Below, in pieces: positions 319 to 40,185 of a stretch of DNA of 64,000 bases (position 1 is the first letter of the stretch; each line of letters opens with the position of its first letter). The stretch covers positions 1 through 64,000 of the IMG/VR virus record IMGVR_UViG_3300047510_001118. One strand, written 5' to 3'. Both the position numbers and the translations under genes were made by a program. Under the pieces are notes generated by a model, which was not told the DNA's origin, did no database searches, and was given only the letters and a program-made list of their open reading frames with translations.

Positions 319-891
319 TTACAGCAGACCTTCTGCTTGTAGAGTCTTTACAGACTCATCACTCAGGGCGACCTGAGTTTGAACATTCAACTCCAAGATT
401 TCGTCTTGAAGTTTTTGTTTGGCTTTTTTGGCCGTAGATACTTCACGACGGAAACCGTCAAGATCTTCTTTGGTAAACACTGTGGTGTCTACTGTGTCGT
501 GGTATCCGTAGATACTGCGACGGCTTTCGCTTTTATCGTTACGGATTTTATCCAAACGACCTGCGATGACCTTTTCGCTTTCGCGAACTTTATTGCCAGC
601 CAGTCCGTTGTAGAACTGGATTTGTTTTTCTAAGTTTGCTACATCGGCCAAGCGGCTGTCAATACCAACCTGTGTGTTTGCTCCACTGACACTCTTACGG
701 ATTTCGTAGAGTGCTGTATTCAGCCCATTCCTACGCTGAATGTTTGTTTTAACTGTTGTGGCCACACGGCTGATCTCTAGTTCAGCATCTTGGAATTCGT
801 TGACTTTGACTGTAACATCAAACTCAAGACCTTTGATAGCCTCATTGATACCATTTTGTAAAGCACTTGCTTTGCGTAGAGAGATGTTCAT
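319..891 (-). CDS. hypothetical coiled-coil phage protein
   Basis: 190-aa ORF with AAGGA SD and its own consensus sigma70 promoter. Confidence 0.8.
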   Translation of the reverse strand: MNISLRKASALQNGINEAIKGLEFDVTVKVNEFQDAELEISRVATTVKTNIQRRNGLNTALYEIRKSVSGANTQVGIDSRLADVANLEKQIQFYNGLAGNKVRESEKVIAGRLDKIRNDKSESRRSIYGYHDTVDTTVFTKEDLDGFRREVSTAKKAKQKLQDEILELNVQTQVALSDESVKTLQAEGLL

Positions 892-914: not shown

Positions 915-943
915 ATTATACATTGACTGTATTTTGTTGTCAA
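915..943 (-). promoter_or_regulatory. sigma70 promoter TTGACA-17-TATAAT
   Basis: Perfect consensus on minus strand. Confidence 0.85.
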
Positions 944-959
944 TACGTTTTGGTGATAT

Positions 960-1051
960 TGGTACCCCCGGCGGGAGTCGAACCCACATTGGCCAATTAT
1001 CTGTTGCTCACGGGATATAAATCCGCTGTTTTACCATTAAACTACAGGGGC
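960..1051 (-). tRNA. tRNA-Ile(TAT), with 22-nt variable region
   Basis: Cloverleaf, T-loop TTCGACT, encoded CCA, anticodon loop TTTATAT. Confidence 0.75.
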
Positions 1052-1062
1052 ATATAAAAGAA

Positions 1063-1172
1063 GCTCGGCTGGCGCTTGAATCCGCGGTAACCCTTCTCTT
1101 CCTGGCACCTCTCTACGTCGTCATGATATCTAGTAGAGTTCAGTGTTGTTCCAGTGTAGTTACTGACCGAGC
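1063..1172 (-). ncRNA. ~110-nt structured RNA between tRNAs
   Basis: Nested stems GCTCGG/CCGAGC, GTAAC/GTTAC, CTGG/CCAG, CTCTAC/GTAGAG. Confidence 0.55.
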
Positions 1173-1177
1173 AAACT

Positions 1178-1251
1178 TGGAGCGGGATACGAGAATCGAA
1201 CTCGTAACTAGAGCTTGGAAGGCTTTCGTTTTACCATTAAACTAATCCCGC
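1178..1251 (-). tRNA. tRNA-Gly(TCC)
   Basis: Cloverleaf, CCA, anticodon TCC. Confidence 0.95.
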
Positions 1252-1256
1252 ATAAA

Positions 1257-1331
1257 TGGTACACCGTAGGAGAATCGAACTCCTCTTACCTGCGTGAAAG
1301 GCGGGTGTCCTAACCGATAGACGAACGGTGC
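1257..1331 (-). tRNA. tRNA-Glu(TTC)
   Basis: Cloverleaf, CCA, anticodon TTC. Confidence 0.95.
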
Positions 1332-1335
1332 TTTG

Positions 1336-2121
1336 TTAAAGATATTTCTGTATTCTTTCTGCTATATTAGCCTGTAATTCTAATTTCATAGTGCCGTTTT
1401 CAGCACCATTGGAATGATATTGTTTAAAAAAATCTATACAATCAATACCACGTCCCATGATACGATCAAAAACTTCGATGTTTTCTTTTTCGTCGTCTCC
1501 GAATCGAACCACAGTCCATTTCAATTTATAATGATTTAATACTTTTACTAACTGTGTATAACTTTTAGAATGTTTTCTAATATACCATTCTCTTGTCTGC
1601 GACAATTGAAAAGCCATACGTTTTACTAATTCTTTGTGTACTTCTATAGGATAATCGTCTGGATTATATTCTACATCGCCATAATTGGGACTTTTTTCAA
1701 ACACATATCTTTTCCCATTATGTTTAAATGAACTTACAATATGCGGAAATGTAAAGTCTGTTACTAGCACATGATCTGGCTGTCCGTGCTTTTCTAAATA
1801 TTGTAAAAGTCTTTTATGGTAACCAACAAAATGGGCACCATTCAAACTACGATTAACTACTGTTCCGGGCAACAAGTTTGGCCAACTAGAATTAAGTTCT
1901 TGTTGTCTTAGATATGCCCAAACAGCAGATTCTATATTTTTTGTCGGCATTGGCTCTTCAACTTTATTTTCAATCTTATGTTTTAGATACCATTTGAACG
2001 CCTGAGGAAAATTTTTATGAAACCGAAGACTCCAAGTTCTAGGAGCAGTTTCATCTAAAATTTGATCTGCTAAACAGTTGTTTCCGTTACTTTGACAATC
2101 GCCTAATACTAATATTTTCAT
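1336..2121 (-). CDS. hypothetical protein, SGNH/GDSL-like N-terminus
   Basis: 261 aa, 'KILVLGDCQS' resembles the GDS block; AT-rich insertion in the tRNA array. Confidence 0.6.
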   Translation of the reverse strand: MKILVLGDCQSNGNNCLADQILDETAPRTWSLRFHKNFPQAFKWYLKHKIENKVEEPMPTKNIESAVWAYLRQQELNSSWPNLLPGTVVNRSLNGAHFVGYHKRLLQYLEKHGQPDHVLVTDFTFPHIVSSFKHNGKRYVFEKSPNYGDVEYNPDDYPIEVHKELVKRMAFQLSQTREWYIRKHSKSYTQLVKVLNHYKLKWTVVRFGDDEKENIEVFDRIMGRGIDCIDFFKQYHSNGAENGTMKLELQANIAERIQKYL

Positions 2122-2129
2122 AATTTATA

Positions 2130-2204
2130 TGGTGGAGGATGGGAGGATCGAACTCCCAACTCATGCTTGCAAAGCACATGTGTTCCCATTAGCACCAATC
2201 CCCC
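2130..2204 (-). tRNA. tRNA-Ala(TGC)
   Basis: G3:U70 pair, anticodon TGC, CCA. Confidence 0.95.
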
Positions 2205-2206
2205 AT

Positions 2207-2392
2207 TTAATCTTTATCAGGACAATCTGGATCTATATCCTGATCGTAATACTCGTTCTTCATTATTGCTTCATCAAACTGTTCGTTATCTGACTTTTTC
2301 TTTTTACTAAAGATAGTATCCCAGTTGTTGTCAAAGGTTTTTTGATCAACACTAAATGGTCTTGGTTTACTACCCTTTCCACCGTCTGACAT
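2207..2392 (-). CDS. small conserved phage protein (MSDGGKGSKPRP...)
   Basis: Strong AAGGAG SD; fills the gap between tRNAs. Confidence 0.75.
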   Translation of the reverse strand: MSDGGKGSKPRPFSVDQKTFDNNWDTIFSKKKKSDNEQFDEAIMKNEYYDQDIDPDCPDKD

Positions 2393-2408
2393 AACATCTC
2401 CTTAAAAT

Positions 2409-2485
2409 TGGCTGGCCTACCTGGGCTCGAACCAGGGACCCTTTGATTAACAGTCAAATGCTACTACCAACTGAGCTATAGGCCA
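2409..2485 (-). tRNA. tRNA-Asn(GTT)
   Basis: Cloverleaf, anticodon GTT. Confidence 0.95.
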
Positions 2486-2493
2486 ATAAAACT

Positions 2494-2568
2494 TGGTACC
2501 TGGTGACAGTTTCGAACTGCCGACCCTCTCGGTGTAAACGAGACGCTCTACCCCTGAGCTAACCAGGC
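2494..2568 (-). tRNA. tRNA-Val(TAC)
   Basis: Cloverleaf, anticodon TAC. Confidence 0.95.
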
Positions 2569-2578
2569 AAACTAACAT

Positions 2579-2656
2579 TGGTCGGAGTACAAGGATTCGA
2601 ACCTTGGACCCCCTGGTCCCAAACCAGGTGCGCTAGCCAGACTGCGCCACACTCCG
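2579..2656 (-). tRNA. tRNA-Pro(TGG)
   Basis: Cloverleaf, anticodon TGG. Confidence 0.95.
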
Positions 2657-2657
2657 A

Positions 2658-2810
2658 TTAACTTGGTATTACATGCGGTATATACGGAACTGCTCTTGGA
2701 CCACCATAGAGTTGTTCAAAAAGTTTTTTAGCCTCTTGCGGTGTCGCCGCATAGATTCTTTTCTTTTCTTCACCACTTGGTGTTCTTACAGTTGTTTCAT
2801 ACATTGGCAT
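2658..2810 (-). CDS. small hypothetical protein (MPMYETTVRTP..., 50 aa)
   Basis: AGGAG SD just after the tRNA-Gly CCA; start corrected from the ORF track. Confidence 0.7.
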   Translation of the reverse strand: MPMYETTVRTPSGEEKKRIYAATPQEAKKLFEQLYGGPRAVPYIPHVIPS

Positions 2811-2822
2811 ATAATAACTCCT

Positions 2823-2898
2823 TGGAGCGGGATAAGAGGCTCGAACTCTCGACCTATACCTTGGCAAGGTATCGCTCTACCAACTGAGCTAATCCCGC
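2823..2898 (-). tRNA. tRNA-Gly(GCC)
   Basis: Cloverleaf, anticodon GCC. Confidence 0.95.
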
Positions 2899-2906
2899 AT
2901 AAATTT

Positions 2907-2941
2907 TGGTGCCCCAAGAGAGACTCGAACTCTCACAGAGC
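2907..2941 (-). pseudogene. isolated 3' half of a tRNA (T-arm, acceptor 3' strand, CCA)
   Basis: GAGAG-TTCGAGT-CTCTC-TTGGGGC-ACCA with no upstream arms. Confidence 0.8.
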
Positions 2942-2945
2942 AAAT

Positions 2946-3022
2946 TGGTGCCTCAGGAGGGACTCGAACCCTCAAAATTTGGCTTCTAAGACCAACACGT
3001 ATACCAATTCCGTCACCGAGGC
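2946..3022 (-). tRNA. tRNA-Leu(TAG), short variable loop
   Basis: Leu-type D-loop GGAATTGGTATAC, anticodon TAG, A73. Confidence 0.9.
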
Positions 3023-3456
3023 GTCTTTCTTTCTTCCCACTTGGCTTTGATTGCTTCTGCTATCTTTGCTTTGTGTTCCGGAGACTTAGTTTTACCTAAG
3101 TTTCCTTTTCCTGCCTTACTTGCTGTTTTACGAGCTTGTAACGCACGAGCTTTTTCTAAACCGTGTTTTTCAACAGTTCTTTCCCAAATAGTTTTGCCAC
3201 TGTTTTCAACTTGATCTTGCCTATTCTCTTGTGCCGTCCCCCAATACAGATGATTAGGATTACCGCACTTAGCATTATGACAAGCATGACATAAATGAAC
3301 TTTATGTCCTGTTGGAACAGTTGTATCTAATAAATGTGCTAACAGTCCTTTGAAATAGTAACTGCCAGCACCTCGTTCAACACAGGCTTCATCTAACTTG
3401 AGATGGTTCTGTCTTTCTGCCTTAGGTAGTAAAATGTATTCTTCTATTAGTTTCAT
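3013..3456 (-). CDS. HNH homing endonuclease with NUMOD3-like C-terminus
   Basis: HLCHACHNAKCGNPNHLYWGTAQEN motif; GKTKSPEHKAKIAEA; start taken at MKLIEEY. Confidence 0.8.
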   Translation of the reverse strand: MKLIEEYILLPKAERQNHLKLDEACVERGAGSYYFKGLLAHLLDTTVPTGHKVHLCHACHNAKCGNPNHLYWGTAQENRQDQVENSGKTIWERTVEKHGLEKARALQARKTASKAGKGNLGKTKSPEHKAKIAEAIKAKWEERKTPR

Positions 3457-3484
3457 ACATTTATTTATGCTAAACACGACAAAA

Positions 3485-3511
3485 GCGTGTCTACCATTCC
3501 ACCACCAGGGC
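3485..3511 (-). pseudogene. isolated 5' half of a tRNA-Leu-like gene
   Basis: GCCCTGG-TGGTGGAATGGTAGACACGC, then abrupt loss of tRNA similarity. Confidence 0.75.
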
Positions 3512-3518
3512 AAAAAAT

Positions 3519-3593
3519 TGGTGCCGGATGTCGGGATCGAACTGACGACCTACCGCTTACAAGGCGGTTGCTCTACCACTGAGCTAATCCGGC
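3519..3593 (-). tRNA. tRNA-Thr(TGT)
   Basis: Cloverleaf, anticodon TGT. Confidence 0.95.
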
Positions 3594-3617
3594 GTGATTC
3601 TATTTATGAAAACTATT

Positions 3618-3692
3618 TGGCGGTCTCAACGAGAATCGAACTCGTCCCTACGGCGTGACAGGCCATTATACTAACCGATATACTATGAGACC
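3618..3692 (-). tRNA. tRNA-Asp(GTC)
   Basis: Cloverleaf, anticodon GTC. Confidence 0.95.
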
Positions 3693-3768
3693 ATATAGAA
3701 GCACACAGACTAACTACCAGAAACACTTATAGTGTCATTACTCGGTTCGAGCCAATGTGCTTTTATAT
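3693..3768 (-). ncRNA. inter-tRNA structured RNA A (shared closing stem)
   Basis: ATATAAAAGCACA...TGTGCTTCTATAT terminal stem. Confidence 0.5.
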
Positions 3769-3857
3769 GGTGGAGCCTGAAGGAATTGAACCTAACTGCC
3801 AGCCACCCAACAATATTATGGCAACGGATTTACAGTCCGCCGTTGGGAACAGGCTCC
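3768..3857 (-). tRNA. atypical tRNA-Tyr(GTA)
   Basis: Anticodon arm GCGGA-CTGTAAA-TCCGT, 8-bp acceptor, no D-stem, long V-arm. Confidence 0.7.
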
Positions 3858-3872
3858 AAACTTACGCGAAAT

Positions 3873-3884
3873 TTTTAAAGAACA
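3873..3884 (-). promoter_or_regulatory. boxA-like antitermination element TGTTCTTTAAAA
   Basis: Matches rrn boxA consensus TGCTCTTTAACA; lies downstream of the internal promoter. Confidence 0.6.
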
Positions 3885-3890
3885 AACAGT

Positions 3891-3983
3891 TGGTGGAAGG
3901 TGTGGGATTCGAACCCACGCACCGCATTTTGTACGGTGGACGGTTTAGCAAACCGCTGCCTTCGGCCACTCAGCCAACCTTCC
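3891..3983 (-). tRNA. tRNA-Ser(GCT)
   Basis: Long V-arm, anticodon GCT. Confidence 0.95.
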
Positions 3984-3995
3984 TAACTTGTGTCT

Positions 3996-4024
3996 ATTAT
4001 ACGACAAGTTTTTTAACTTGTCAA
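3996..4024 (-). promoter_or_regulatory. internal sigma70 promoter TTGACA-17-TATAAT with palindromic spacer
   Basis: TTGACAAGTTAAAAAACTTGTCGTATAAT. Confidence 0.85.
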
Positions 4025-4032
4025 CTACTTTA

Positions 4033-4122
4033 TGGCGGAAGCGGTGAGATTCGAACTCACGGACCATTTCTGATCGTCTGTTTTCAAGACAGGTGCAATA
4101 AACCGGACTCTGCCACACTTCC
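4033..4122 (-). tRNA. tRNA-Ser(TGA)
   Basis: Long V-arm, anticodon TGA, G73. Confidence 0.95.
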
Positions 4123-4130
4123 ATAAATTT

Positions 4131-4211
4131 TGGTGCCCCTAATCGGATTCGAACCGATAGTTATGACACTCCTTTTGAGAGAGCCGCCTTTACCAATTTG
4201 GCCATAGGGGC
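4131..4211 (-). tRNA. tRNA-Leu(CAA)
   Basis: Anticodon loop CTCAAAA; reduced V-arm. Confidence 0.9.
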
Positions 4212-4216
4212 AATAC

Positions 4217-4288
4217 TGGCGCCTCTGGAGAGATTCGAACTCCCATAACCTGGTTTAGAAGACCTGGCACTGCTCCATCAGCAGAGGC
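4217..4288 (-). tRNA. tRNA-Arg(TCT), compact D-arm
   Basis: Anticodon loop CTTCTAA; 72 nt. Confidence 0.8.
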
Positions 4289-4291
4289 TAC

Positions 4292-4375
4292 TGGTGCGAG
4301 AGACGGGACTCGAACCCGTATGCCTTTCGACGGCAGATTTTAAGTCTGCTGCGTATACCATTCCGCCACTCTCGC
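4292..4375 (-). tRNA. tRNA-Leu(TAA)
   Basis: Cloverleaf, anticodon TAA. Confidence 0.95.
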
Positions 4376-4379
4376 ATAC

Positions 4380-4455
4380 TGGTGCCGCTCCTTGGGATCG
4401 AACCAAGTTCCTCGGTGCTTCAAACCGGTGCAATGACCACATTTGCTAAAGCGGC
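4380..4455 (-). tRNA. tRNA-Phe(GAA)
   Basis: Anticodon loop TTGAAGC. Confidence 0.9.
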
Positions 4456-4504
4456 AAAAGAAAAACTCTACACACTAACTATGTTAACCGAGTAGAGCCA
4501 TAAT

Positions 4505-4579
4505 TGGGGTGAAGCCGGGAATCGAACCCTGCCTTACTGTTTCACAGACAGCCGTGCGTACCACTACACTAGCAACACC
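4505..4579 (-). tRNA. tRNA-His(GTG)
   Basis: G-1:C73, anticodon GTG. Confidence 0.92.
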
Positions 4580-4585
4580 ATTGTT

Positions 4586-4659
4586 TGGTATCGCGTACGG
4601 GGATCGAACCCGCCTGACTAGGTTGAAAGCCTAGTGACCTCCCAGAAGTCCAACGCGAT
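4586..4659 (-). tRNA. tRNA-Glu(TTC), second copy, divergent
   Basis: Anticodon loop CTTTCAA. Confidence 0.88.
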
Positions 4660-4665
4660 GTTGTT

Positions 4666-4743
4666 TGGCACCCCTGGAAGGACTTGAACCTTCGACTCCT
4701 ACCTTCGCAAGGTAGTACTCTGATTCCGCTGAGTTACAGGGGT
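4666..4743 (-). tRNA. tRNA-Arg(GCG)
   Basis: CTACC-TTGCGAA-GGTAG anticodon arm. Confidence 0.85.
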
Positions 4744-4905
4744 ATTAATACGTTCTAAAGCATCACGTCGCATTTTAAACGGACGATGCTCATCGGGACG
4801 ATGTACAATCAAATATTCCACACCGTCAATGTTTTCGGTCACACGGGTATCGTCACAGACAAATCGCTCATTATTAAAACGATTTTTAAACATAGTTTGT
4901 TTCAT
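4699..4905 (-). CDS. small hypothetical protein; 3' end overlaps tRNA-Arg(GCG)
   Basis: AAGGAG SD; 68 aa. Confidence 0.65.
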   Translation of the reverse strand: MKQTMFKNRFNNERFVCDDTRVTENIDGVEYLIVHRPDEHRPFKMRRDALERINTPVTQRNQSTTLRR

Positions 4906-4927
4906 GACAATCTCCTTAAAGTTGTTT

Positions 4928-5002
4928 TGGCCGGCCTGGAGAGATTCGAACTCCCGACTGCTGGTTTCGAAGACCAGAACTCTTCCACTGAGCTACAGGC
5001 CG
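4928..5002 (-). tRNA. tRNA-Arg(TCG)
   Basis: Anticodon loop CTTCGAA. Confidence 0.92.
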
Positions 5003-5010
5003 ATAATGTT

Positions 5011-5084
5011 TGGCACGGGTGCTAGGGCTCGAACCTAGAATAACAGAGTCAAAGTCTGTGGTGTTACCATTACACTACACCCGA
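5011..5084 (-). tRNA. tRNA-Gln(TTG)
   Basis: Anticodon TTG, G73. Confidence 0.93.
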
Positions 5085-5091
5085 TCAGAAC

Positions 5092-5166
5092 TGGTGGTAA
5101 TGGAAAGAGTCGAACTTTCACAGCGCACCGTATGAAGGTGTTGCACTACCATTATGCTACATTACC
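5092..5166 (-). tRNA. tRNA-CAT (elongator Met or Ile2)
   Basis: Anticodon CAT; lacks initiator C1:A72 mismatch and 3 G-C pairs. Confidence 0.85.
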
Positions 5167-5319
5167 ATATAGAAACATACTAATGAACCAGCCTGACGCA
5201 GCCGTACGCTTGGCAGATCGTTTCCAATCTGTTTCTCGCTTTTCTCGGTACTCTGTATGTTCAGGATTCCGCAGTCCTCAATACAATCGCTTGTAAGGGC
5301 AACTAATATGTTTTTATAT
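5167..5319 (-). ncRNA. inter-tRNA structured RNA B (shared closing stem)
   Basis: ATATAAAAACATA...TATGTTTCTATAT terminal stem, internal hairpins. Confidence 0.55.
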
Positions 5320-5392
5320 GGTAGGGGCACAGAGAATCGAACTCTGATTAATAGGTTAAAAGCCTACTACTTTGCCGTTAAGTTATACCCCC
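5319..5392 (-). tRNA. tRNA-Lys(TTT)
   Basis: Anticodon TTT. Confidence 0.93.
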
Positions 5393-5518
5393 ACGATCTT
5401 ACCACTCTTGTCACTTTCCATAACAGGATCTCCTATTTTAAATTTTTGTCGATAAAATATATCAATACTACAAGCATGAGTAAAACGGCCACCGCCCCAT
5501 TTTAGTTCCCCTTATAGT

Positions 5519-5593
5519 TGGTGCCTAATCTTGGGAACGATCCAAGGACCTATGCGTTATCAACACATTGCTCTACCACTGAGCTAATTAGGC
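5519..5593 (-). tRNA. tRNA-Ile(GAT)
   Basis: Anticodon GAT; variant T-loop ATCGTTC. Confidence 0.9.
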
Positions 5594-5799
5594 AAAATGA
5601 ATTTGTAAGTAGTTGCCCCATCGTTATAGCAACCATTCACCCGTGTAATTAAGCCGGCCGGGACTCGGTACGTCACTTGGAATACTTAACCAACGTGTCT
5701 ATTTTTTGCTAGGGTTTTGCGCCCCCCGTTGCCTTACTATAGTCAGCTCTTCGAAGAAGCCTGCTATAGTGTCTTTCTCTTGCTGACACTTACAAAACT

Positions 5800-5877
5800 T
5801 GGAGTGAGGAGTCGGATTTGAACCGACGGCTTTACAGTTTTGCAGACTGTTGCATTGGGCCTCTCTGCCATCCTCAC
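5800..5877 (-). tRNA. tRNA-Cys(GCA)
   Basis: Anticodon GCA, U73. Confidence 0.93.
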
Positions 5878-5883
5878 ATTACT

Positions 5884-5960
5884 TGGCGACCCGGGAAGGA
5901 TTTGAACCTCCGACATTTGGTTTTGGAGACCAACGTTCTGCCAGACTGAACTACCGAGCC
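5884..5960 (-). tRNA. tRNA-Trp(CCA)
   Basis: Anticodon CCA, G73. Confidence 0.93.
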
Positions 5961-6688: not shown

Positions 6689-6717
6689 ATTATAGTGTCG
6701 ATATTTTCTTGCGTCAA
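6689..6717 (-). promoter_or_regulatory. sigma70 promoter TTGACG-17-TATAAT for the leader/tRNA operon
   Basis: Near-consensus hexamers. Confidence 0.8.
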
Positions 6718-6774
6718 CCAGTTTTGGACGGATTGAACATTGTTAAAATAACAACAGAAATTATCAACTGTTTT

Positions 6775-6803
6775 ATTATATGAGTATTTATATATCTTGT
6801 CAA
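6775..6803 (-). promoter_or_regulatory. sigma70 promoter TTGACA-17-TATAAT containing T4-type late promoter TATAAATA
   Basis: TTGACAAGATATATAAATACTCATATAAT. Confidence 0.75.
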
Positions 6804-8335: not shown

Positions 8336-11300
8336 ATGTCAAAGAAGCAGATTAAAGATTATAGATTTGTACCAGGAGCGATTGCCGAAGCGGCAAATCA
8401 ATATCCTAATGCTGTAGAATTAATTACAGCAAATAAAGATTATATCATTGAAGAAATTATTGGTTACCTAACATTTGCGTCAAATACACCAAGTGTTGCT
8501 CCTGCGTCCTATCCTAATGCTATAGCCCAACTAACAAATAACAAAGAGTTTATCAAAGAAGAAGCCAGTGCTTGGATCGAAGCACAAATCGATGCTGCCA
8601 CAGAGGGACAGCCGTTTTTTGAATATAACTATGACGAAGTCATAAAAGCAAAGTGTAAGCGAGATGTTGGTTATCTAGTTGATGCTTGGATAACGGATAT
8701 AACTGGTGGTGGTAATGCTGACACTATCCGTATCGGAAGAACATATTTCCGTAATGGTGATCCGCAACTACTAAGCCCTACAGAAGAAACAGCGGTTTAT
8801 ACATTTTTAAAAACTTTAATCAATACTAATGTATTGCCTAGAGTAGCGGCAACTTCTTTACAAAGTCCTGTTGTTGCGGCACAGAGTCTTACAGGTTCGG
8901 CAGCAGAGGCTGCGGCTATTACACGGTTTAATACTTTGATTGATATTATTCGTAACTTGATTCCTAACGGATTAACAAGTTTACCTGCTATCTCTTACAA
9001 CTATAATTCAGCATTTATTGGCTATACCTATGATACTGCCAAGTGCCGTAGAGACAGCGGATATATCTTAGACAGTTATATCTATGATATGACCTATGGT
9101 GGAAATAGTTCTACTTGGTATGTAAGTTCCAGATATTGGATACAAGGAATAGCACAGGTCGACGGCAGTCGCCAGCCAGAAATTCTAGCACATACATTTG
9201 CTAGAAATCTCATTAACAATTACATATTACAAAAAATCTTATATCCATCATATCAACTAGTTGAAACCCAAACAGATGTAGGAGGTCCAGTTGAAGCCAG
9301 TTCTTCGACTAAAGTTACTACATTGTCTAATATTCTATTGAATACGATTCAAAACGGTCTAAGCTCATTGCCACGCAACGATGCGCCCGGAAGTCAAGGT
9401 GGAGGATTAATGCCTAACACTGTGGCATTGATCGATGCTAACAAGAGATTTATTGCCGAAGAAGCGGCCGCATATATCGCATATAATGTTACTAATAATA
9501 TTAGTCCATTTGTATTCTTCACATATAATGCTGCCAAATGTGCTAGAGATGTTAGTTATATCATTGAAGGTTACATCACAGATCTTGCCAATGGTGGAAA
9601 TAGACAAACAGTACACAATGCCAGCAAGTATTGGGAAAATGGTGTAGCCGCAGTCGATGGCAGTCGTGAACCAGAAATTTCAACTCATACATTTATTCGA
9701 GATCTAATAGACAACTACATTTTAAATAATGTTGCCTATCCAGCCAAACAAACAGCAGTTCCGCAGACATTTATCAATTCTATACAATCAGAAGTGTTTG
9801 CTCAGACTAGAATTAAAGAACTGTCAAATACGGTATTAGAAGTTATAGAATATGGATTAGATTATCTTCCTACTACGGTTTCAAATCGAGGGTACATTAA
9901 AATACAGGGATTCTATAAACTCAAAGATTTCTTGTTAGTAACAAACACTAATAGAAACATCATACTTTATAACTTTGCTGATCCTAACTCAGCGGCTGAA
10001 GTCACCTACAGTGAATTCGCAGATTCTGACTTCCCGGCATTTGGAGCCACTGCTGATAAAATTACTACATTAACTTTTGATGTAGATACCACAGGTATGA
10101 TGGTCACTGACAATATTCAAATATTTGTCGAAGAAAAATATACTACAGTTAAACAAAGTCCAATTGGTTCAGATGCCATGGAACGTATGAAAGTTGGTAT
10201 TCCCCAGGCCATGCTTGACGCTGACTTTGAATACGGTCTACAACCCACCAAATGGCAGACAATCAGTTTGATGAGAAGTTATCCATCTGTTTATGAAATT
10301 CCAGGCACCGACGTACAGGTTTCGTTAGTGGTCACAGATGCCAGCGCAGGAACAGCAGGTATTGGTGCTAGCCTCATTACAGTTACCACTGTTGCGGCAC
10401 ACGAATTAGTCGTAGGAGATCCTATCACAATCAAGGCGCTGGCTAACACTGTTACTGGATTTAGCCGAGCAGAGGGTAGTTTCTTGGTTAACAGCGTACC
10501 AGCCGCTAATCAATTTACTTTCTATGCTAAGAGTAAAGTTGGTACTACTAATGGACAAGTATTGGCCACAACATATACACAGTTGCGTAAGGGTGATTTT
10601 TATACCGGCGCATCGGTCGGTCAACCGACATTTAGTGTGGCTTCAAACGGAAGTTCGGGATCCTTTACTACAAACTTAATCACTCTCAGCGGCAGCGACT
10701 TTATTGCGTTTACAGGTACAGCACCGCCAGTAGGAGCCCCCTTAATTGCCGCCGGCATTAATACTGGTACACAAATAACTGCGGTTGTAGGATCCGGTGG
10801 TACTGCGGCTTCAACTACTTTGATTTCAAATGCTGAAGTCGGCGAGTCGACAATTACAGTTAACAATACCACTGGCATATCACCAGGTTTAGCCTTTGAT
10901 CGGGGTGATGGTAGATCTATACGTGTTACTCAAGTTTTAGGTTCAGCAATCAGCCTCAGCGATCCATTAACAGCAAGGATCCTAGGAACTAACGCTTCAT
11001 ACACTGGCCTAACTGGAACATACTCCGGAGTTGACGGAAGTGGAGCAGTATTCACAGTTTCTAGAGCAGGCGCAACATATTCTGCTTCTCCTTCGAATCC
11101 TGGTGAAGGTTATTCCGTTGGTCAAACCTTTACAATTTCAGGAACAAGTTTAGAAGGAACAGCACCGGCTAATAATGCTACATTAACTATCACAGCCGCA
11201 AGTAATAGAAAGACTGTGGCTAGTTTTGATCCATTATCATTATTTGGCGGAGCAAATTATTCACAGACAACTAATATTGCCACTACTGGCGGCGACGGTA

Positions 11301-14300
11301 CAGGATTAACAGTTGATGTTACCCTAGATGGAAACGGAACTATTCTAACTGTAGCAGTTAATAATGCTGGTCAGAATTACAATGTTGGCAATGTGGTCAA
11401 CATTAGACAGGGTCGTGTACAGCAGGCCAATATTGATCAAGCGGGCACAGGATACACTACAGGAACAAAAGCAACTAGTACTGCTGGTTCTGGTTCTGGA
11501 CTAACTTTATCTGTTACTGCTAACAACATCAATGGTGTAGGCGGATTAAACTTAGTCAGTGCTGGTACAGGTTACAGTTCAGGATCTGCTAATACCACAG
11601 GTGGTGGCGGTACTGGCTTGGTCGTTAACGTCCAAGCAGAACCTGTTGGCGGAGCATCTACTATTTCTCTTACAAATCCGGGATCAGGCTACAGTGACGG
11701 GTCATCTAGCACTACTGCTATAACTGGCTCAGGATCTGGATTGAGTGTTAACCTTACTACCAGCGGCGGCGTAATTTCTAATGCTACCATAATGCCTAGC
11801 ATGAAAGGTTCTGGATATGTTGTTGGTAACCAATTAACTGTTAACGGCGGCAACGGTGATGCTGTTATCACAGTCACAGCAGTTACAAACGGACAAGTAG
11901 TTGGTCTAACTGTTGATCAACAGGGTAGCGGTTATACCAACGGTGGAACTATCACTGTCACGGGCGGTAGCGGCACTGCTACAGCAACAATTACCTCAGT
12001 AACCAATGGACAGATTACACAAATTGCTGTGGTAAATCCTGGATTAGGTTACGTTAACGGTGACACTGTTAACATATTAGGTGGTACTGGTGGTACCGCT
12101 ACTATCGCTAATATTGAAGGCGAAGCAGTTATCGCAATAGCATCAGTTAACGCAGGTGGTCTAATACAAACAGTCAGCGCAACTGGAACACCGGTTAGTG
12201 CGCCAACTAGAAATTTCTTAAGTGCTGTTACATTGAGCGAAGTAACATCGGCGCAGATTGCATCTGGCGTAACAGTGACCTATAGTGCTATTGCTACAAT
12301 CCAAGTTGACTTTGCTTCAGAGCACGGATTCGTTCCAGGAAATAGTATTATTACTTCTATTTCTAGTACTGGTTCAAATCATCAATTGGCAGCAGGCCCA
12401 TTCTATATTGAATCAACGCCTTTGCCTACAAGAATTCGATATACGGCTAGAACTTCAGGAACAGTTGACACGAATAGTGTTATAACAGGAACTATATATG
12501 CTAGGCCCGACAGTTATTATGTACATAGACCATTTGATGGTGGTGTACAGTTAGGTACAGGCGGACCACAACACGGTGCTGGTGCTGTTCGTCAAAGTAA
12601 AAAATATATCCGTTATCAATCTGGTAAGGGAGTTATGTATAACACCGGAGCCCTATTTGCTCCCAGTTACGATCTTAGAAGTGCCACAGCCAGCGGCACA
12701 GCAGTTGGATCTCTGATCACGATTACCACAGACGACACCGACCACGGATGCCAAGTCGGTGCTGGTATTAATATCACTGGTATCGCTACCAGTGGTTACA
12801 ATGGACAATATATCGTATCCGACGTCATTGATGAAAGAACTCTAAGAGTTCAAGCAATTAGAACACTAGGAGCAACATCTGCGGTATTAACTAACAGTGC
12901 TCAGATAGCAGTTCGTAGTTGGCACGGTGCTACGGTCCGAGCAGGTGCGTTTGACGACCAAAACGGAATGTTCTGGCAGTATGACGGACAGAGATTGGCA
13001 GTTGTAAAGCGTTCAAGTACTTTCCAAATTGCTGGAGTTATCAGCGTTAACTCGGATTCAAATGCTGTTACAGGAACTAATACACGATTTACGCAACAAT
13101 TAGCCGCAGGGGATAAAATTGTTCTACGCGGTATGAGTCATACTGTAACTCGTGTGATCAGCGATACATCGATGACCGTTGCTCCTGACTATAGAGGTGT
13201 TAATAATGTATCCAATGTAAAAATTTGTAAAACAGTTGATGATTTATATCCTCAAGAATATTGGAATACAGATCCATGTAACGGATCAGGACCCAGCGGG
13301 TACAATATTGACATCACTAAAATGCAGATGATCGGACTACAGTATACATGGTATGGTGCTGGATTTATTGATTTTATGCTACGTGGTGCTGATGGAAATT
13401 ATGTATTTGCTAATCGTATTCGAAATAGCAACGTGAACACAGAAGCGTTTATGCGTACAGGTAACTTACCAGTTAGATACGAAGTTACCAATGAAGGAGC
13501 AAAGAGTGTATTGACTTCGGCAATGACTGCTTCTCAAACAACAATTCCATTAGAAGATACATATTGGTTCCCTAATAACGGTATTGTAATGATTAACAAT
13601 GAGTTGATTGCCTATACTGGTAGAACTTCTACACAGTTAACTGGCTGTACTAGAGCTACACAGATGAGTTTATTTGTAGGCGGTAGCCAAAGAAGTTTCT
13701 CAGCAGGTTCTGCTAGTACGCATTCAGCAGGAGCAGGTGTTATTCTAGTTAGCAATACTGTTACTCCGATTATTAGTCACTGGGGTAGTGCGTTTTTAAC
13801 AGACGGTAGATTTGACGAAGACCGTGGCTACATTTTTAACTATACTGCTACTAACGTCAGTGTGTCGACTACTAGACAAACTGCGTTCTTAATTCGATTA
13901 GCACCTAGCGTATCAAATGCTATTGTTGGTGACTTAGGCGATAGAGAATTATTAAACAAGGCGCAGTTGCTATTACAATCGATTGAAATTACTGCTGATA
14001 CAGGTACAGGAGGTATGGTTATTGAAGGTGTATTAAATCCTCAAAACTATCCTATTAATCCAGCAGACATCACATGGAACGGATTACAAAATGCTGCACA
14101 AGGTGGTCAGCCAAGTTTTGCGCAGATCGCTCCGGGTGGTTCAGTTAATTGGTCCAGCGGGGTTGAAACTACAACAGCCTCTGCCACCACATCTAGCAGT
14201 TTAACAGGATCTGTAACTGCTAGAATGGTTTATAATAACAGTGGTAATTTGACTACTAGTCCAACTCGAAGTATCACAACAAATCAACGTAAAATTTACT

Positions 14301-17269: not shown

Positions 17270-17371
17270 AAAAGTTCCTAAAATAAAAAGGGCTGTATTT
17301 CTTCAGCCCTAACTATGCATATTAACGCATTAGTAAACAAAACGTAAGTCTTTTTGGTGAAACTGATAAAA

Positions 17372-17395
17372 GAAAAGGCTCCGAAGAGCCTTTTC
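17372..17395 (-). terminator. terminator after tmRNA
   Basis: gaaaaggctc-cgaa-gagccttttc. Confidence 0.8.
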
Positions 17396-17752
17396 ACTAT
17401 TTTGGGTTACAAGGTATAGTTACCCCGGAGCTGCAGTTTCTTAGGCTGCTAGTTCAAAACGCTTGCCTGTTACAGCGAAGTCAGTTTTGAAATACTCAAA
17501 TGTAGATGCGTTTGCATTTACTAGTTTTGCTTGATTAACGGTCATCGCCTACCGTGTTGCCTCTTTCGCTATCTCGCCATGTCGAAACCGGTCGGGCCCA
17601 TCATAAAAGGACTAGAGCAAATACTACGAGTACAACTACTACACCTATTCCTAGATGAGTTAGATCATCGTTCATACTAATCTCCTTATGGTGGACCCGG
17701 GGGGAATCGAACCCCCGTCCACAACGCCTTCACTACGAAGGAATTACAACAA
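17396..17752 (-). ncRNA. ssrA: two-piece (circularly permuted) tmRNA
   Basis: Acceptor piece ends GGTTCGATTCCCCCCGGGTCCACCA (17689). Coding piece starts GGGCCCGACCGGTTTCGAC (17599). G3:U70. Tag ANASTFEYFKTDFAVTGKRFELAA* at 17441-17515. Confidence 0.9.
17601..17675 (-). CDS. 24-aa hydrophobic peptide inside the tmRNA intervening segment
   Basis: AAGGAG SD + MNDDLTHLGIGVVVVLVVFALVLL*. Confidence 0.5.
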   Translation of the reverse strand: MNDDLTHLGIGVVVVLVVFALVLL

Positions 17753-17756
17753 TACC

Positions 17757-17960
17757 TTAGGCTGGCTGAATATTGCTAGCCTGTTGACCTTTCATGCCCA
17801 TAGTTACTTCAAACCTTACACTCTGTCCTTCTTGTAGGCTTTTGAAGCCACTTGACTGAATCTGTGAAAAGTGAGCAAATAAGTCTGCGCCACCATCGTC
17901 CGGTGTAATGAACCCAAAACCTTTGGCGTCGTTAAACCATTTTACTTTTCCTGTTACCAT
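17757..17960 (-). CDS. cspA: cold-shock protein
   Basis: [20 protein letters not shown] motifs. Confidence 0.95.
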
Positions 17961-40104: not shown

Positions 40105-40185
40105 ATTGTTATCTCCTTTAATTAAGCAAGATTTAAGTTTGGGCAACTGCCCGTTTATAGGACCCGAAGCATCCTACAATTTTAT

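What the first reader, a model, noticed from the sequence alone, without database searches (positions are those of the whole stretch)
960..5960. 28-tRNA array covering the whole code, with modification-independent anticodons
The array covers all 20 amino acids if the CAT tRNA is Met. It includes Ile(TAT), which can read AUA without TilS lysidine, and Arg(GCG) plus Arg(TCG), which read the CGN box without TadA inosine. Proteobacteria typically use Ile2(CAT) and Arg(ACG) instead. Inference: the set is designed to be independent of host modification enzymes and to evade anticodon nucleases, consistent with the attenuator.
Basis: partly seen in the sequence, partly recalled or inferred. Interest (0 to 1): 0.6.

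Follow-up and report, generated by a model that had tools for sequence, protein, structure and literature searches.

The report
Phage tRNA array with odd tRNAs
A freshwater jumbo phage carries a near-minimal full set of 28 tRNA genes. The set mostly fits its AT-rich codon usage, but two members (a tyrosine tRNA with no normal D arm, and an isoleucine tRNA with an extra anticodon-like hairpin) belong to conserved, apparently undescribed phage tRNA classes.

Summary
The array is real. ARAGORN finds 27 tRNAs on the minus strand at 960-5960. The 28th (3768-3857) is a GUA-anticodon RNA that standard tools miss.

"Built to be independent of modification enzymes" is only partly supported:
- The same genome encodes a CAU tRNA with Ile2/TilS-substrate hallmarks.
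- Most related arrays keep Arg(ACG).
- Many U34 tRNAs in the set still need wobble modification.
- Codon usage explains the set and its duplicates simply (GC3 29%; AUA is 27% of Ile codons).
- Nuclease evasion could not be tested because the host is unknown.

New findings:
1. The Tyr gene is one of about 58 homologues in uncultivated phage contigs. They share an 8/4 acceptor branch and have no D hairpin. A covarying long-range helix and a crossing 3-bp helix replace it. These genes substitute for canonical tRNA-Tyr in their arrays.
2. Ile(UAU) belongs to a widespread 90-95-nt class, also present in cultured Vibrio phages. Its variable hairpin carries a conserved YAGAUAA loop resembling the Ile(GAU) anticodon loop.
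3. Arg(GCG) is a derived replacement of Arg(ACG) in the same syntenic slot and always occurs with Arg(UCG).

The parts
960..1051 (-). tRNA-Ile(UAU), 92 nt, long-arm class. The variable region forms a 3-bp hairpin with loop CAGAUAA. It has an A31.C39 mismatch and an encoded CCA.
   Evidence: ARAGORN. Rfam tRNA 54 bits. Family alignment A4 and pair counts. Homologues in 35 IMG/VR contigs and 43 Vibrio phage records.
915..943 (-). Perfect sigma-70 consensus promoter (TTGACA, 17-nt spacer, TATAAT) downstream of the array and upstream of ORF 891-319.
   Evidence: 12/12 match.
319..891 (-). 190-aa ORF of unknown function, conserved next to tRNA arrays in relatives (39-53% identity in L078, L123, L119, L079, L015, L013).
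1178..1331 (-). tRNA-Gly(UCC) at 1178-1251 and tRNA-Glu(UUC) at 1257-1331.
1336..2121 (-). 261-aa ORF inside the array. It has no Pfam or PHROG family and no homologue in related arrays.
   Evidence: A strain-level copy is present in run X5.
2130..2204 (-). tRNA-Ala(UGC).
2207..2392 (-). 61-aa ORF conserved within related tRNA arrays (11 loci).
2409..3022 (-). tRNA-Asn(GUU) 2409-2485, Val(UAC) 2494-2568, Pro(UGG) 2579-2656, Gly(GCC) 2823-2898, Leu(UAG) 2946-3022.
3013..3513 (-). HNH homing-endonuclease ORF (166 aa) inside the array.
   Evidence: Pfam zf-His_Me_endon and HNH_3; PHROG HNH endonuclease families.
3519..3692 (-). tRNA-Thr(UGU) 3519-3593 and tRNA-Asp(GUC) 3618-3692.
3768..3857 (-). 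Noncanonical tRNA-Tyr(GUA)-like gene, 90 nt. It has an 8-bp acceptor stem; a long-range helix CCCAAC/GTTGGG that encloses the anticodon arm; a 6-bp anticodon stem with loop CUGUAAA; a crossing helix GCC/GGC; a T arm of 3 bp plus a U.U pair; and ACCA at the 3' end.
   Evidence: Covariance model R1 scores it 108.8 bits. Divergent members give compensatory changes in the crossing helix and the anticodon stem.
3891..3983 (-). tRNA-Ser(GCU).
3996..4024 (-). Perfect sigma-70 consensus promoter inside the array, directly upstream of Ser(GCU) and the noncanonical Tyr.
   Evidence: 12/12 match.
4033..4659 (-). tRNA-Ser(UGA) 4033-4122, Leu(CAA) 4131-4211, Arg(UCU) 4217-4288 (reduced D arm), Leu(UAA) 4292-4375, Phe(GAA) 4380-4455 (G37 in the loop), His(GUG) 4506-4579, Glu(UUC) 4586-4659.
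4666..4743 (-). tRNA-Arg(GCG), loop UUGCGAA. It is the orthologue of relatives' Arg(ACG).
4699..4905 (-). Small ORF (about 53-68 aa) conserved between the two CGN-box Arg tRNAs in 9 related arrays (up to 89% identity). Its 3' end overlaps the Arg(GCG) gene.
4928..5960 (-). tRNA-Arg(UCG) 4928-5002, Gln(UUG) 5011-5084, Met(CAU) 5092-5166, Lys(UUU) 5319-5392, Ile(GAU) 5519-5593, Cys(GCA) 5800-5877, Trp(CCA) 5884-5960.
6689..6803 (-). Two consensus sigma-70 promoters (6803-6775 with 12/12 match, 6717-6689 with 11/12 match) about 0.8 kb upstream of the array on its strand.

Best explanation
This is a phage-encoded, near-minimal but complete elongator tRNA set. There is one U34 tRNA for each four-codon box, G34 tRNAs for the NNY boxes, and U34 tRNAs for the NNR boxes, plus Ile(UAU), Met(CAU) and Trp(CCA). 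It lies in an uncultivated freshwater jumbo phage whose host is probably betaproteobacterial. The array appears to be transcribed by host RNA polymerase from consensus sigma-70 promoters (predicted, not shown). The tRNAs must be charged by host synthetases, because none of the synthetase families searched is encoded in the record. The main role I infer is to supply decoding capacity matched to the phage's AT-rich codon usage and to keep phage translation running when host tRNAs are limiting or depleted. Ile(UAU) is a widespread phage tRNA class. Arg(GCG)+Arg(UCG) is a derived replacement of the inosine-dependent Arg(ACG). Tyrosine decoding is provided by a structurally rearranged tRNA. Shown here: gene presence, the anticodons, conservation and covariation, synteny, the codon-usage match and the promoter motifs. 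Inferred: expression, charging, and the selective reason for the set.
For: 27 tRNAs are called by ARAGORN and 26 by Rfam, plus one conserved noncanonical gene.

Codon usage over 73,552 codons has GC3 of 29%. AUA is 17.9 per 1000 codons, about as frequent as AUG. The duplicated tRNAs match the most-used codons: Glu(UUC) twice for GAA at 47.7 per 1000; Leu(UAA) and Arg(UCU) twice each in the genome for UUA at 30.1 and AGA at 15.5 per 1000. GCG and UCG fit the CGU/CGC/CGA usage.

There are three perfect TTGACA-17-TATAAT promoters on the array's strand. About 0.002 perfect matches would be expected by chance in 6.4 kb (my estimate).

All array tRNAs except His, whose called sequence ends ...CC, encode CCA, and no CCA-adding enzyme is encoded. 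None of the aaRS, RNA-ligase, TilS-like or deaminase families searched is present in the 278-kb record.

The array shares gene order with dozens of IMG/VR arrays. An HNH endonuclease and conserved small ORFs are interspersed, as in T4/T5-type tRNA regions.

Phage context: virus record, structural proteins.

Host hints: DnaK is 70-73% identical to betaproteobacterial DnaK, and the tmRNA is the beta-type two-piece form.
Against: There is no direct evidence of expression or charging. Contigs from RNA libraries cover only single tRNAs or rearranged arrays of relatives, and may derive from contaminating DNA. The host is not identified, so the mismatch between host and phage codon usage is assumed, not measured. 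Codon supply alone does not explain why tRNA-Tyr and tRNA-Ile(UAU) have rearranged structures. It also does not explain why ACG was replaced by GCG in two separate sequence groups. The record is only about 75% complete, so genes reported as absent could lie in the missing part.
Confidence: 0.65

Rival explanations
1. Counter-defence. The array exists chiefly to replace host tRNAs that are cut or depleted by tRNA-targeting defences (PrrC/RloC-type anticodon nucleases, PARIS AriB, retron-Eco7 PtuAB and similar systems). Under this view the odd members (rearranged Tyr, long-arm Ile, Arg with G34 instead of A/I34, Phe with G37) are forms those nucleases cannot recognise.
For: There is precedent. 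Phage tRNAs with anticodon-loop changes escape tRNases (PMC10264068). T5 tRNA-Tyr expressed from a very strong promoter rescues phage from retron-Eco7, whose effector depletes tRNA-Tyr (PMC11555353). A T5 tRNA-Lys neutralises PARIS (PMC11464382). In the window, a perfect consensus promoter sits directly upstream of Ser(GCU) and the noncanonical Tyr. The Tyr body is radically rearranged while G1-C72, A73 and the GUA loop are kept. 10 of 24 shared isoacceptor types differ from a sampled Burkholderiales genome at loop positions 32, 37 or 38.
Against: The host and its defence systems are unknown. The loops of classic targets are unchanged relative to the sampled bacterium: Lys CUUUUAA, Asn, Asp and Tyr CUGUAAA. 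No RNA-repair genes were found. A complete 20-amino-acid set is more than is needed to counter nucleases that each target one or a few tRNAs.
Confidence: 0.25
2. One reading: the set was selected to be independent of host anticodon-modifying enzymes. UAU avoids TilS and lysidine; GCG plus UCG avoid TadA and inosine.
For: UAU, GCG and UCG are present. GCG replaces ACG in the same syntenic slot, always together with UCG, and does so in two unrelated sequence groups. The sampled candidate-lineage bacterium uses CAT (Ile2) and ACG. tRNA-Ile(UAU) decoding AUA without lysidine is known in Mycoplasma mobile and in a Bacillus subtilis tilS-deletion strain (PMC3575796, PMC3919564).
Against: The genome also encodes an Ile2-type CAU tRNA that would need TilS and no TilS-like protein. 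27 of 54 related arrays keep ACG. Ile(UAU) is also carried by cultured Vibrio phages. U34 tRNAs in split codon boxes need xm5(s2)U-type modification, and U34 in Ile(UAU) must itself be restricted so that it does not read AUG (established knowledge). TilS and TadA are essential, pre-existing host enzymes, so a need to avoid them is not evident.
Confidence: 0.1
3. The unusual members (the Tyr-like gene, the 92-nt Ile and the low-scoring Arg(UCU)) are decaying pseudogenes or tRNA-derived elements with no role in decoding.
For: Standard tools miss the Tyr gene or score it poorly. Arg(UCU) scores 25 bits, below the Rfam threshold. Ile(UAU) has an A.C mismatch in its anticodon stem.
Against: Both classes are conserved across many divergent contigs with compensatory base changes in every helix. 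The Tyr-like gene and canonical Tyr are nearly mutually exclusive in arrays: of 28 large arrays with the noncanonical gene, only 2 also have a canonical Tyr. All 5 large arrays that were fetched without reference to Tyr have exactly one of the two kinds. CCA ends, A73 and the anticodon loops are invariant.
Confidence: 0.04

Closest known systems
tRNA gene clusters of large lytic phages (T4 and T5 tRNA regions; jumbo phage XacN1 with 56 tRNAs for all 20 amino acids, PMC5852040)
   Same: A dense one-strand cluster of tRNA genes interspersed with small ORFs and a homing endonuclease. Coverage of all, or nearly all, amino acids. U34-rich anticodon set in an AT-rich phage. Strong host-type promoters.
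   Different: No close DNA similarity to any of 50,697 GenBank phage records beyond single tRNAs. The array contains a rearranged Tyr tRNA and an Arg(GCG). The phage also carries a two-piece tmRNA and a DnaK.
Phage tRNAs that evade tRNA-targeting defences (PMC10264068; T5 tRNA-Tyr against retron-Eco7, PMC11555353; T5 tRNA-Lys against PARIS, PMC11464382)
   Same: Phage-borne isoacceptors of tRNAs that defence systems are known to target (Tyr, Lys, Arg and others). A strong consensus promoter lies in front of the Tyr gene.
   Different: In the known cases the changes are point substitutions in otherwise canonical tRNAs. Here the Tyr body is re-wired while its anticodon loop is unchanged. No defence system or host is known for this phage.
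tRNA-Ile(UAU) of Mycoplasma mobile and of the Bacillus subtilis tilS-deletion suppressor (PMC3575796, PMC3919564)
   Same: A UAU anticodon that can decode AUA without lysidine.
   Different: Those are canonical class I tRNAs in cells that lack TilS or tRNA-Ile2. The phage tRNA has an extra conserved hairpin with a YAGAUAA loop. It also coexists with an Ile2-type CAU tRNA in the same genome.
8/4 and 9/3 'allo-tRNAs' and the 8/4 tRNA-Ser and tRNA-His of bacteria and their phages (Mukai et al., PMC5389517)
   Same: A 12-layer acceptor branch made of an 8-bp acceptor stem and a shortened T stem. Location in phage tRNA polycistrons. Detected only weakly by the tRNA-Sec model.
   Different: Allo-tRNAs keep a local, Sec-like D hairpin. 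The phage Tyr has none: its D-side strand pairs with a segment 3' of the anticodon arm, and a second helix crosses that one. The anticodon and identity features point to Tyr, not Ser or His.
D-arm-lacking mitochondrial tRNAs (metazoan tRNA-Ser(AGY), nematode tRNAs; PMC4013460, PMC7609411)
   Same: No D hairpin, and an anticodon helix extended by coaxial base pairs.
   Different: The mitochondrial tRNAs are short (about 55-65 nt) and work with co-evolved mitochondrial factors. The phage RNA is 88-93 nt, must use bacterial factors, and replaces the D arm with a long-range helix rather than a loop.

Membership tests
Phage-encoded tRNA gene array | Cluster of genes that fold as tRNAs | tested here: met
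   27 ARAGORN calls and 26 Rfam hits above the gathering score within 5 kb.
Phage-encoded tRNA gene array | Located in a phage genome | tested here: met
   IMG/VR virus record of 278 kb. PHROG structural, tail and endolysin hits. A virion protein related to that of cyanophage S-CAM1.
Phage-encoded tRNA gene array | The tRNAs are transcribed, processed and aminoacylated during infection | not testable with these tools
   Only promoter motifs and ambiguous RNA-library contigs are available.
Anticodon-nuclease-evading phage tRNAs | The host carries a tRNA-cleaving defence that targets the same isoacceptor | not testable with these tools
   The host is unknown. Only a lineage hint is available, from DnaK and the tmRNA type.
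Anticodon-nuclease-evading phage tRNAs | Anticodon-loop substitutions relative to the host's tRNA at nuclease recognition positions | tested here: inconclusive
   Compared with one sampled Burkholderiales genome, 14 of 24 shared isoacceptor types have identical loops (including Lys, Asn, Asp and Tyr) and 10 differ at positions 32, 37 or 38. That genome is not known to be the host.
Lysidine-independent AUA decoding by tRNA-Ile(UAU) (Mycoplasma mobile type) | tRNA-Ile gene with a UAU anticodon | tested here: met
   Loop UUUAUAU at 960-1051. The anticodon is conserved in 36 family members.
Lysidine-independent AUA decoding by tRNA-Ile(UAU) (Mycoplasma mobile type) | The system lacks tRNA-Ile2(CAU) and TilS | tested here: not met
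   An Ile2-type CAU tRNA lies at genome position 113957-114034. The candidate-lineage bacterium has an Ile2(CAU) tRNA.
Inosine-independent CGN decoding | Arg(GCG) plus Arg(UCG) are present and Arg(ACG) is absent | tested here: met
   there is no ACG tRNA in the 278-kb record. The same pattern holds in the 4 other arrays that have GCG.
8/4 noncanonical tRNAs (allo-tRNA type) | 8-bp acceptor stem plus 4-bp T stem | tested here: met
   All 8 acceptor pairs are supported, 5 of them covarying. The T stem has 3 Watson-Crick pairs plus a fourth layer that is U.U, G.U or A-U.
8/4 noncanonical tRNAs (allo-tRNA type) | Sec-like local D stem closed by a tetraloop | tested here: not met
   The D-side strand (alignment A3 columns 11-16) pairs with columns 50-55, which lie beyond the anticodon arm. 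5 of these 6 pairs covary.
Bacterial tRNA-Tyr | GUA anticodon, G1-C72, A73 and a long variable region (bacterial TyrRS identity set, from established knowledge) | tested here: met
   All four features are invariant in 38 sequences.
Bacterial tRNA-Tyr | Canonical cloverleaf with a D arm; charged by TyrRS | tested here: not met
   The cloverleaf was tested and not found: there is no D hairpin. Charging by TyrRS cannot be tested here.

The most novel reading that the evidence does not exclude
Freshwater and marine phages carry two undescribed, structurally re-engineered tRNA classes that still work with host machinery. (a) A tRNA-Tyr whose D arm is replaced by a pseudoknotted core: the D-side strand pairs with a segment placed inside the variable region. 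This keeps the TyrRS identity elements but presents a body that host tRNA-Tyr-directed nucleases may not recognise. (b) A tRNA-Ile(UAU) that carries a second, Ile(GAU)-anticodon-loop-like hairpin (YAGAUAA) in its variable region. This hairpin might act as an in-cis recognition element for IleRS or another reader of the anticodon loop, so that a UAU anticodon can be charged with Ile in hosts whose IleRS expects G34 or lysidine-34. Together with repeated A34-to-G34 switching in tRNA-Arg, this would mean that phage arrays are a place where tRNA identity and architecture are actively re-invented.
Probability: 0.3. Interest if true: 0.85.

Novelty: new variant of a known kind. Interest (0 to 1): 0.66.

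Why it matters
Phage tRNA arrays are well known, and so is the idea that they compensate for codon usage or counter tRNA-cleaving defences. What this window adds is three concrete, testable cases.

1. A conserved bacterial-world tRNA with no D hairpin. Such structures were thought to be essentially confined to mitochondria. If it is charged and used, it widens what bacterial TyrRS, EF-Tu, RNase P and the ribosome are known to tolerate. It would also give genetic-code engineers a natural orthogonal-looking scaffold.
2. A tRNA-Ile(UAU) class with an anticodon-loop look-alike in its variable arm. It is present in cultured Vibrio phages, so it can be studied at the bench immediately. It bears on the long-standing question of how AUA can be decoded without lysidine.
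3. A natural experiment in which Arg(ACG) has been replaced by Arg(GCG)+Arg(UCG).

There is also a practical consequence. ARAGORN and the Rfam tRNA model (the tools run here) miss the Tyr gene, so such arrays would be scored as lacking tRNA-Tyr.

Tried and rejected
- ARAGORN with a relaxed threshold (ps80) gave 167 calls, mostly noise, and called the Tyr gene only as '???'. I did not use it.
- The search for related loci with the adjacent 474-aa protein returned three loci with no tRNAs.
- blastn of the two CAT tRNAs against E. coli genomes found nothing, because a 75-nt query cannot reach significance in 28 Gb. I classified them instead using the published acceptor-stem rules and one bacterial genome.
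- blastn of the Tyr gene and of Arg(GCG) against GenBank phages found no homologues.
- I tested whether the ORF next to Ile(UAU) is a conserved partner. It shows no similarity to the neighbouring ORF in Vibrio phage henriette.
- Laying RNA-library contigs on the array gave only tRNA-sized pieces and joints from rearranged arrays of relatives, so it neither shows nor excludes transcription.
- Host naming failed. The genome I used for comparison (G070) shares only 62-88% identity with the array tRNAs, so it is a stand-in for a lineage, not the host.
- For the Ile variable hairpin, the register that includes a G-C outer pair (alignment A4 columns 50-64) was rejected: 34 of 36 sequences are unpaired there.
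- The Fisher test on noncanonical versus canonical Tyr is biased, because most loci were fetched with a Tyr anticodon-arm pattern. I report only the counts.
- Covariance model R2 is too tRNA-generic for E-values to separate the class. I used bit scores instead: 98 for a true member against at most 60.5 for bacterial tRNA-Leu.

Full report
**Context.** The window is the first 64 kb of an IMG/VR virus record of 278,126 bp. The record is linear and CheckV estimates it at about 75% complete. Freshwater and lake-water metagenome runs hold the array stretch: four runs from two studies hold 86-93% of the sampled words, and runs from further studies hold parts of it. The genome is about 39% GC. Phage hallmarks are present:
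- a 2,211-aa virion protein about 52% identical to that of Synechococcus phage S-CAM1;
- tail-like, endolysin and ribonucleotide-reductase genes;
- a DnaK;
- a permuted two-piece tmRNA.

No GenBank phage record resembles the array region beyond single tRNAs.

**Checking the observation.** ARAGORN finds 27 tRNA genes on the minus strand between 960 and 5960. Rfam's tRNA model finds 26 of them above its gathering score, and Arg(UCU) scores just below it. Neither tool calls a tRNA-Tyr.

In the 200-bp gap between Asp and Ser(GCU) lies a 90-nt sequence (3768-3857, minus strand). It has a perfect 8-bp acceptor stem, A73 plus CCA, a CUGUAAA anticodon loop and a TTCAATT T loop, but no D hairpin. Rfam matches it only to tRNA-Sec, at 29 bits.

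The whole record holds three more tRNAs, at 113,957-114,206: CAT, Leu(UAA) and Arg(UCU).

**The Tyr gene is a conserved noncanonical tRNA.** An exact search with its anticodon arm in IMG/VR returned 82 contigs. In 56 loci (the window's own copy included, as are two sequences of other types, L076 and L087) ARAGORN does not call the sequence. I aligned 38 distinct sequences (alignment A3) and counted base pairs for a structure with five helices:
- an 8-bp acceptor stem;
- a 6-bp long-range helix between the strand after the acceptor stem and a segment 3' of the anticodon arm;
- a 6-bp anticodon stem;
- a 3-bp GCC/GGC helix that crosses the long-range helix;
- a T stem.

99.6% of cells form standard pairs. 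11 of 26 pairs show changes on both sides. None of 500 shuffles and none of the slid controls comes near these values. In the long-range helix, 5 of 6 pairs covary.

The anticodon stem and the GCC/GGC helix were fixed by my search pattern, so that set could not test them. A covariance model (R1) then found two divergent members, L027 and L028, at 74 bits. In these, GCC/GGC becomes GGC/GCC, and in L028 the anticodon stem also changes compensatorily. Both helices are therefore supported as well.

The fourth T-stem layer is U.U, G.U or A-U. This gives an 8/4 acceptor branch, as described for allo-tRNAs and for some phage tRNA-Ser and tRNA-His (PMC5389517). Unlike those, this RNA has no local D hairpin.

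G1-C72, A73 and the GUA anticodon are invariant. Together with a long variable region, these make up the bacterial TyrRS identity set (established knowledge).

**The noncanonical gene stands in for canonical tRNA-Tyr.** Among arrays with at least 15 tRNAs, 26 have only the noncanonical gene, 12 have only a canonical Tyr, and 2 have both. This count is biased, because most loci were fetched with a Tyr pattern. However, all five large arrays fetched by unrelated patterns have exactly one kind: L009, L040 and L123 have a canonical Tyr, and L027 and L028 have the noncanonical gene.

In the window the gene order is Tyr-Asp-Thr. The nearest relative, L123, has a canonical Tyr in the same Tyr-Asp-Thr position.

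R1 scores the window copy at 108.8 bits. Its best hit in 151 sampled Burkholderiales genomes is 30.5 bits, on ordinary tRNAs. GenBank phages hold no homologue. The paper searches found no description of such a phage tRNA.

**Ile(UAU) belongs to a long-arm class.** The 92-nt gene is not an oddity of this window. Its variable-region core is identical in 35 IMG/VR contigs. About 80%-identical copies are annotated as tRNA-Ile in 43 Vibrio phage records, including henriette 12B8 and the Thalassavirus group.

In loci fetched by the unrelated Tyr pattern, 17 of 19 Ile(UAU) genes are 90-95 nt long. None of these carries the exact core, so they give an unbiased view of the variable arm.

On 36 sequences (alignment A4) every cloverleaf helix covaries. 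The variable region forms a 3-bp hairpin whose three pairs show 5, 9 and 7 double changes. Its 7-nt loop reads Y-A-G-A-U-(A/U)-A, with A-G-A-U invariant. This loop matches the Ile(GAU) anticodon loop (Y-U-G-A-U-A-A) except at the position corresponding to 33. A further 5 nt, the length of a class I variable loop, follow the hairpin.

What the hairpin does is unknown. An in-cis recognition mimic for IleRS or another reader of the anticodon loop is my speculation.

Model R2 scores a true member at 98 bits. Its best hits in 151 Burkholderiales genomes score at most 60.5 bits, and the two I examined are tRNA-Leu(UAA).

**Arg(GCG) is a derived replacement of Arg(ACG).** In related arrays the block His-Glu-Arg(ACG or GCG)-Arg(UCG) is syntenic. 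The window's Arg(GCG) is 88-90% identical to the Arg(ACG) of L071 and L079. The main differences lie in the anticodon arm: A34 to G, C32 to U, and a flipped 31-39 pair.

Of 54 arrays with at least 10 tRNAs, 27 have ACG and 4 have GCG. GCG never occurs with ACG and always occurs with UCG. The GCG tRNAs fall into two sequence groups that are only about 60% identical. The decoding logic is coherent: without inosine, CGA needs UCG.

Evidence against modification-independence as a design principle:
- The second CAT tRNA (113,957-114,034) has G3-C70, C4-G69, C5-G68 and G27.U43. G3/C70 excludes Met and fMet by the published rule, and C4-G69/C5-G68 are the E. coli TilS determinants (PMC1635315).
- That tRNA is 85% identical to a CAT tRNA of a complete Burkholderiales genome (G070) which carries G3-C70, C4-G69 and C5-G68.
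- The record encodes no PP-loop TilS-like protein and no deaminase-family protein.
- U34 tRNAs for Lys, Glu, Gln, Leu(UAA) and Arg(UCU), and Ile(UAU) itself, depend on wobble restriction (established knowledge).

Evidence for a simpler driver:
- GC3 is 29%. AUA makes up 27% of Ile codons, at 17.9 per 1000.
- The duplicated tRNAs match the most-used codons.

- G070, a stand-in from a candidate host lineage, has Arg ACG, CCG, CCT and TCT and three CAT tRNAs.
- It has no UAU, GCG or UCG tRNA.

Nuclease evasion remains untestable. Compared with G070, loops are identical for 14 of 24 shared isoacceptor types, including Lys, and differ for 10. No RNA-repair genes were found.

**Expression signals and host hints.** Three perfect TTGACA-17-TATAAT promoters lie on the array's strand: at 6803-6775, at 4024-3996 (directly upstream of Ser(GCU) and the Tyr gene) and at 943-915. 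This recalls the strong promoter of T5 tRNA-Tyr that counters retron-Eco7 (PMC11555353).

DnaK is 70-73% identical to betaproteobacterial DnaK and 65-68% identical to gammaproteobacterial DnaK. The tmRNA matches Rfam's beta two-piece family, which only 3 of 151 sampled Burkholderiales genomes carry. All 39 tRNAs of G070 encode CCA, as the phage's tRNAs do with the exception of His as called.

**Verdict.** The array is an ordinary kind of object, a complete phage tRNA set that fits the phage's codon usage. The 'modification-independent, nuclease-evading design' reading is only partly supported.

The unexpected yield is structural: a conserved tRNA-Tyr without a D hairpin, and a long-arm Ile(UAU) with an anticodon-loop look-alike. 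Both are widespread in phages and, as far as I could find, undescribed. A recurrent ACG-to-GCG switch in tRNA-Arg adds to this. None of the three has been shown to be expressed or charged.

Noticed in passing
window 17350-17792 (-): Phage-encoded permuted (two-piece) tmRNA with tag peptide ANASTFEYFKTDFAVTGKRFELAA. It scores 132 bits on Rfam tmRNA_permuted and 126 bits on beta_tmRNA. Only 3 of 151 sampled Burkholderiales genomes carry that tmRNA type, so it could narrow down the host.
   Followed up: partly
G000 113957-114206 (+), outside the window (locus L124): A second small tRNA cluster: an Ile2-type CAT tRNA, Leu(UAA) and Arg(UCU). It is followed by a terminator-like hairpin and a TTGACA-17-TATACT promoter. 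These tRNAs are closer to bacterial tRNAs (74-85% identity) than the array tRNAs are (62-88%, most under 80%), which suggests a more recent acquisition.
   Followed up: partly
window 38224-40146 (-): Phage-encoded DnaK (Hsp70), 70-73% identical to betaproteobacterial DnaK. Huge phages such as the Lak phages also encode one.
   Followed up: partly
window 4699-4905 (-), 2207-2392 (-), 319-891 (-): Small ORFs of unknown function that are conserved at fixed positions inside or beside related tRNA arrays. One always lies between the two CGN-box Arg tRNAs, with up to 89% identity in 9 arrays.
   Followed up: partly
window 4217-4288 (-), 4380-4455 (-), 4506-4579 (-): Other deviant array members. Arg(UCU) is 72 nt with a much-reduced D arm (Rfam 25 bits); the Arg(UCU) of two related arrays is also 72 nt. 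Phe(GAA) has G37-C38 in its anticodon loop, where the sampled bacterium has A37-A38. His has two U.U mismatches in its acceptor stem and the lowest Rfam score among the hits above the gathering threshold (36 bits).
   Followed up: no
loci L052, L054, L057, L071, L079, L085 and others, 10-25 nt upstream of the noncanonical Tyr gene: Many relatives share a GAGTGTGTT(A)CAAAT-like motif just upstream of the Tyr gene. In 30 of 53 loci no tRNA is called upstream of the Tyr gene within the fetched stretch. The motif could be a phage promoter or a processing signal. It is not present in the window.
   Followed up: no
window 8336-14971 (+): A 2,211-aa virion structural protein whose closest GenBank relatives are in T4-like cyanophages (S-CAM1 and S-CAM3, 48-54% identity over about half its length). 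The other host hints point to Betaproteobacteria.
   Followed up: no
window 915-943, 3996-4024, 6775-6803 (-): Three perfect 12/12 sigma-70 consensus promoters within 6.4 kb. This implies heavy reliance on host RNA polymerase for this region.
   Followed up: partly
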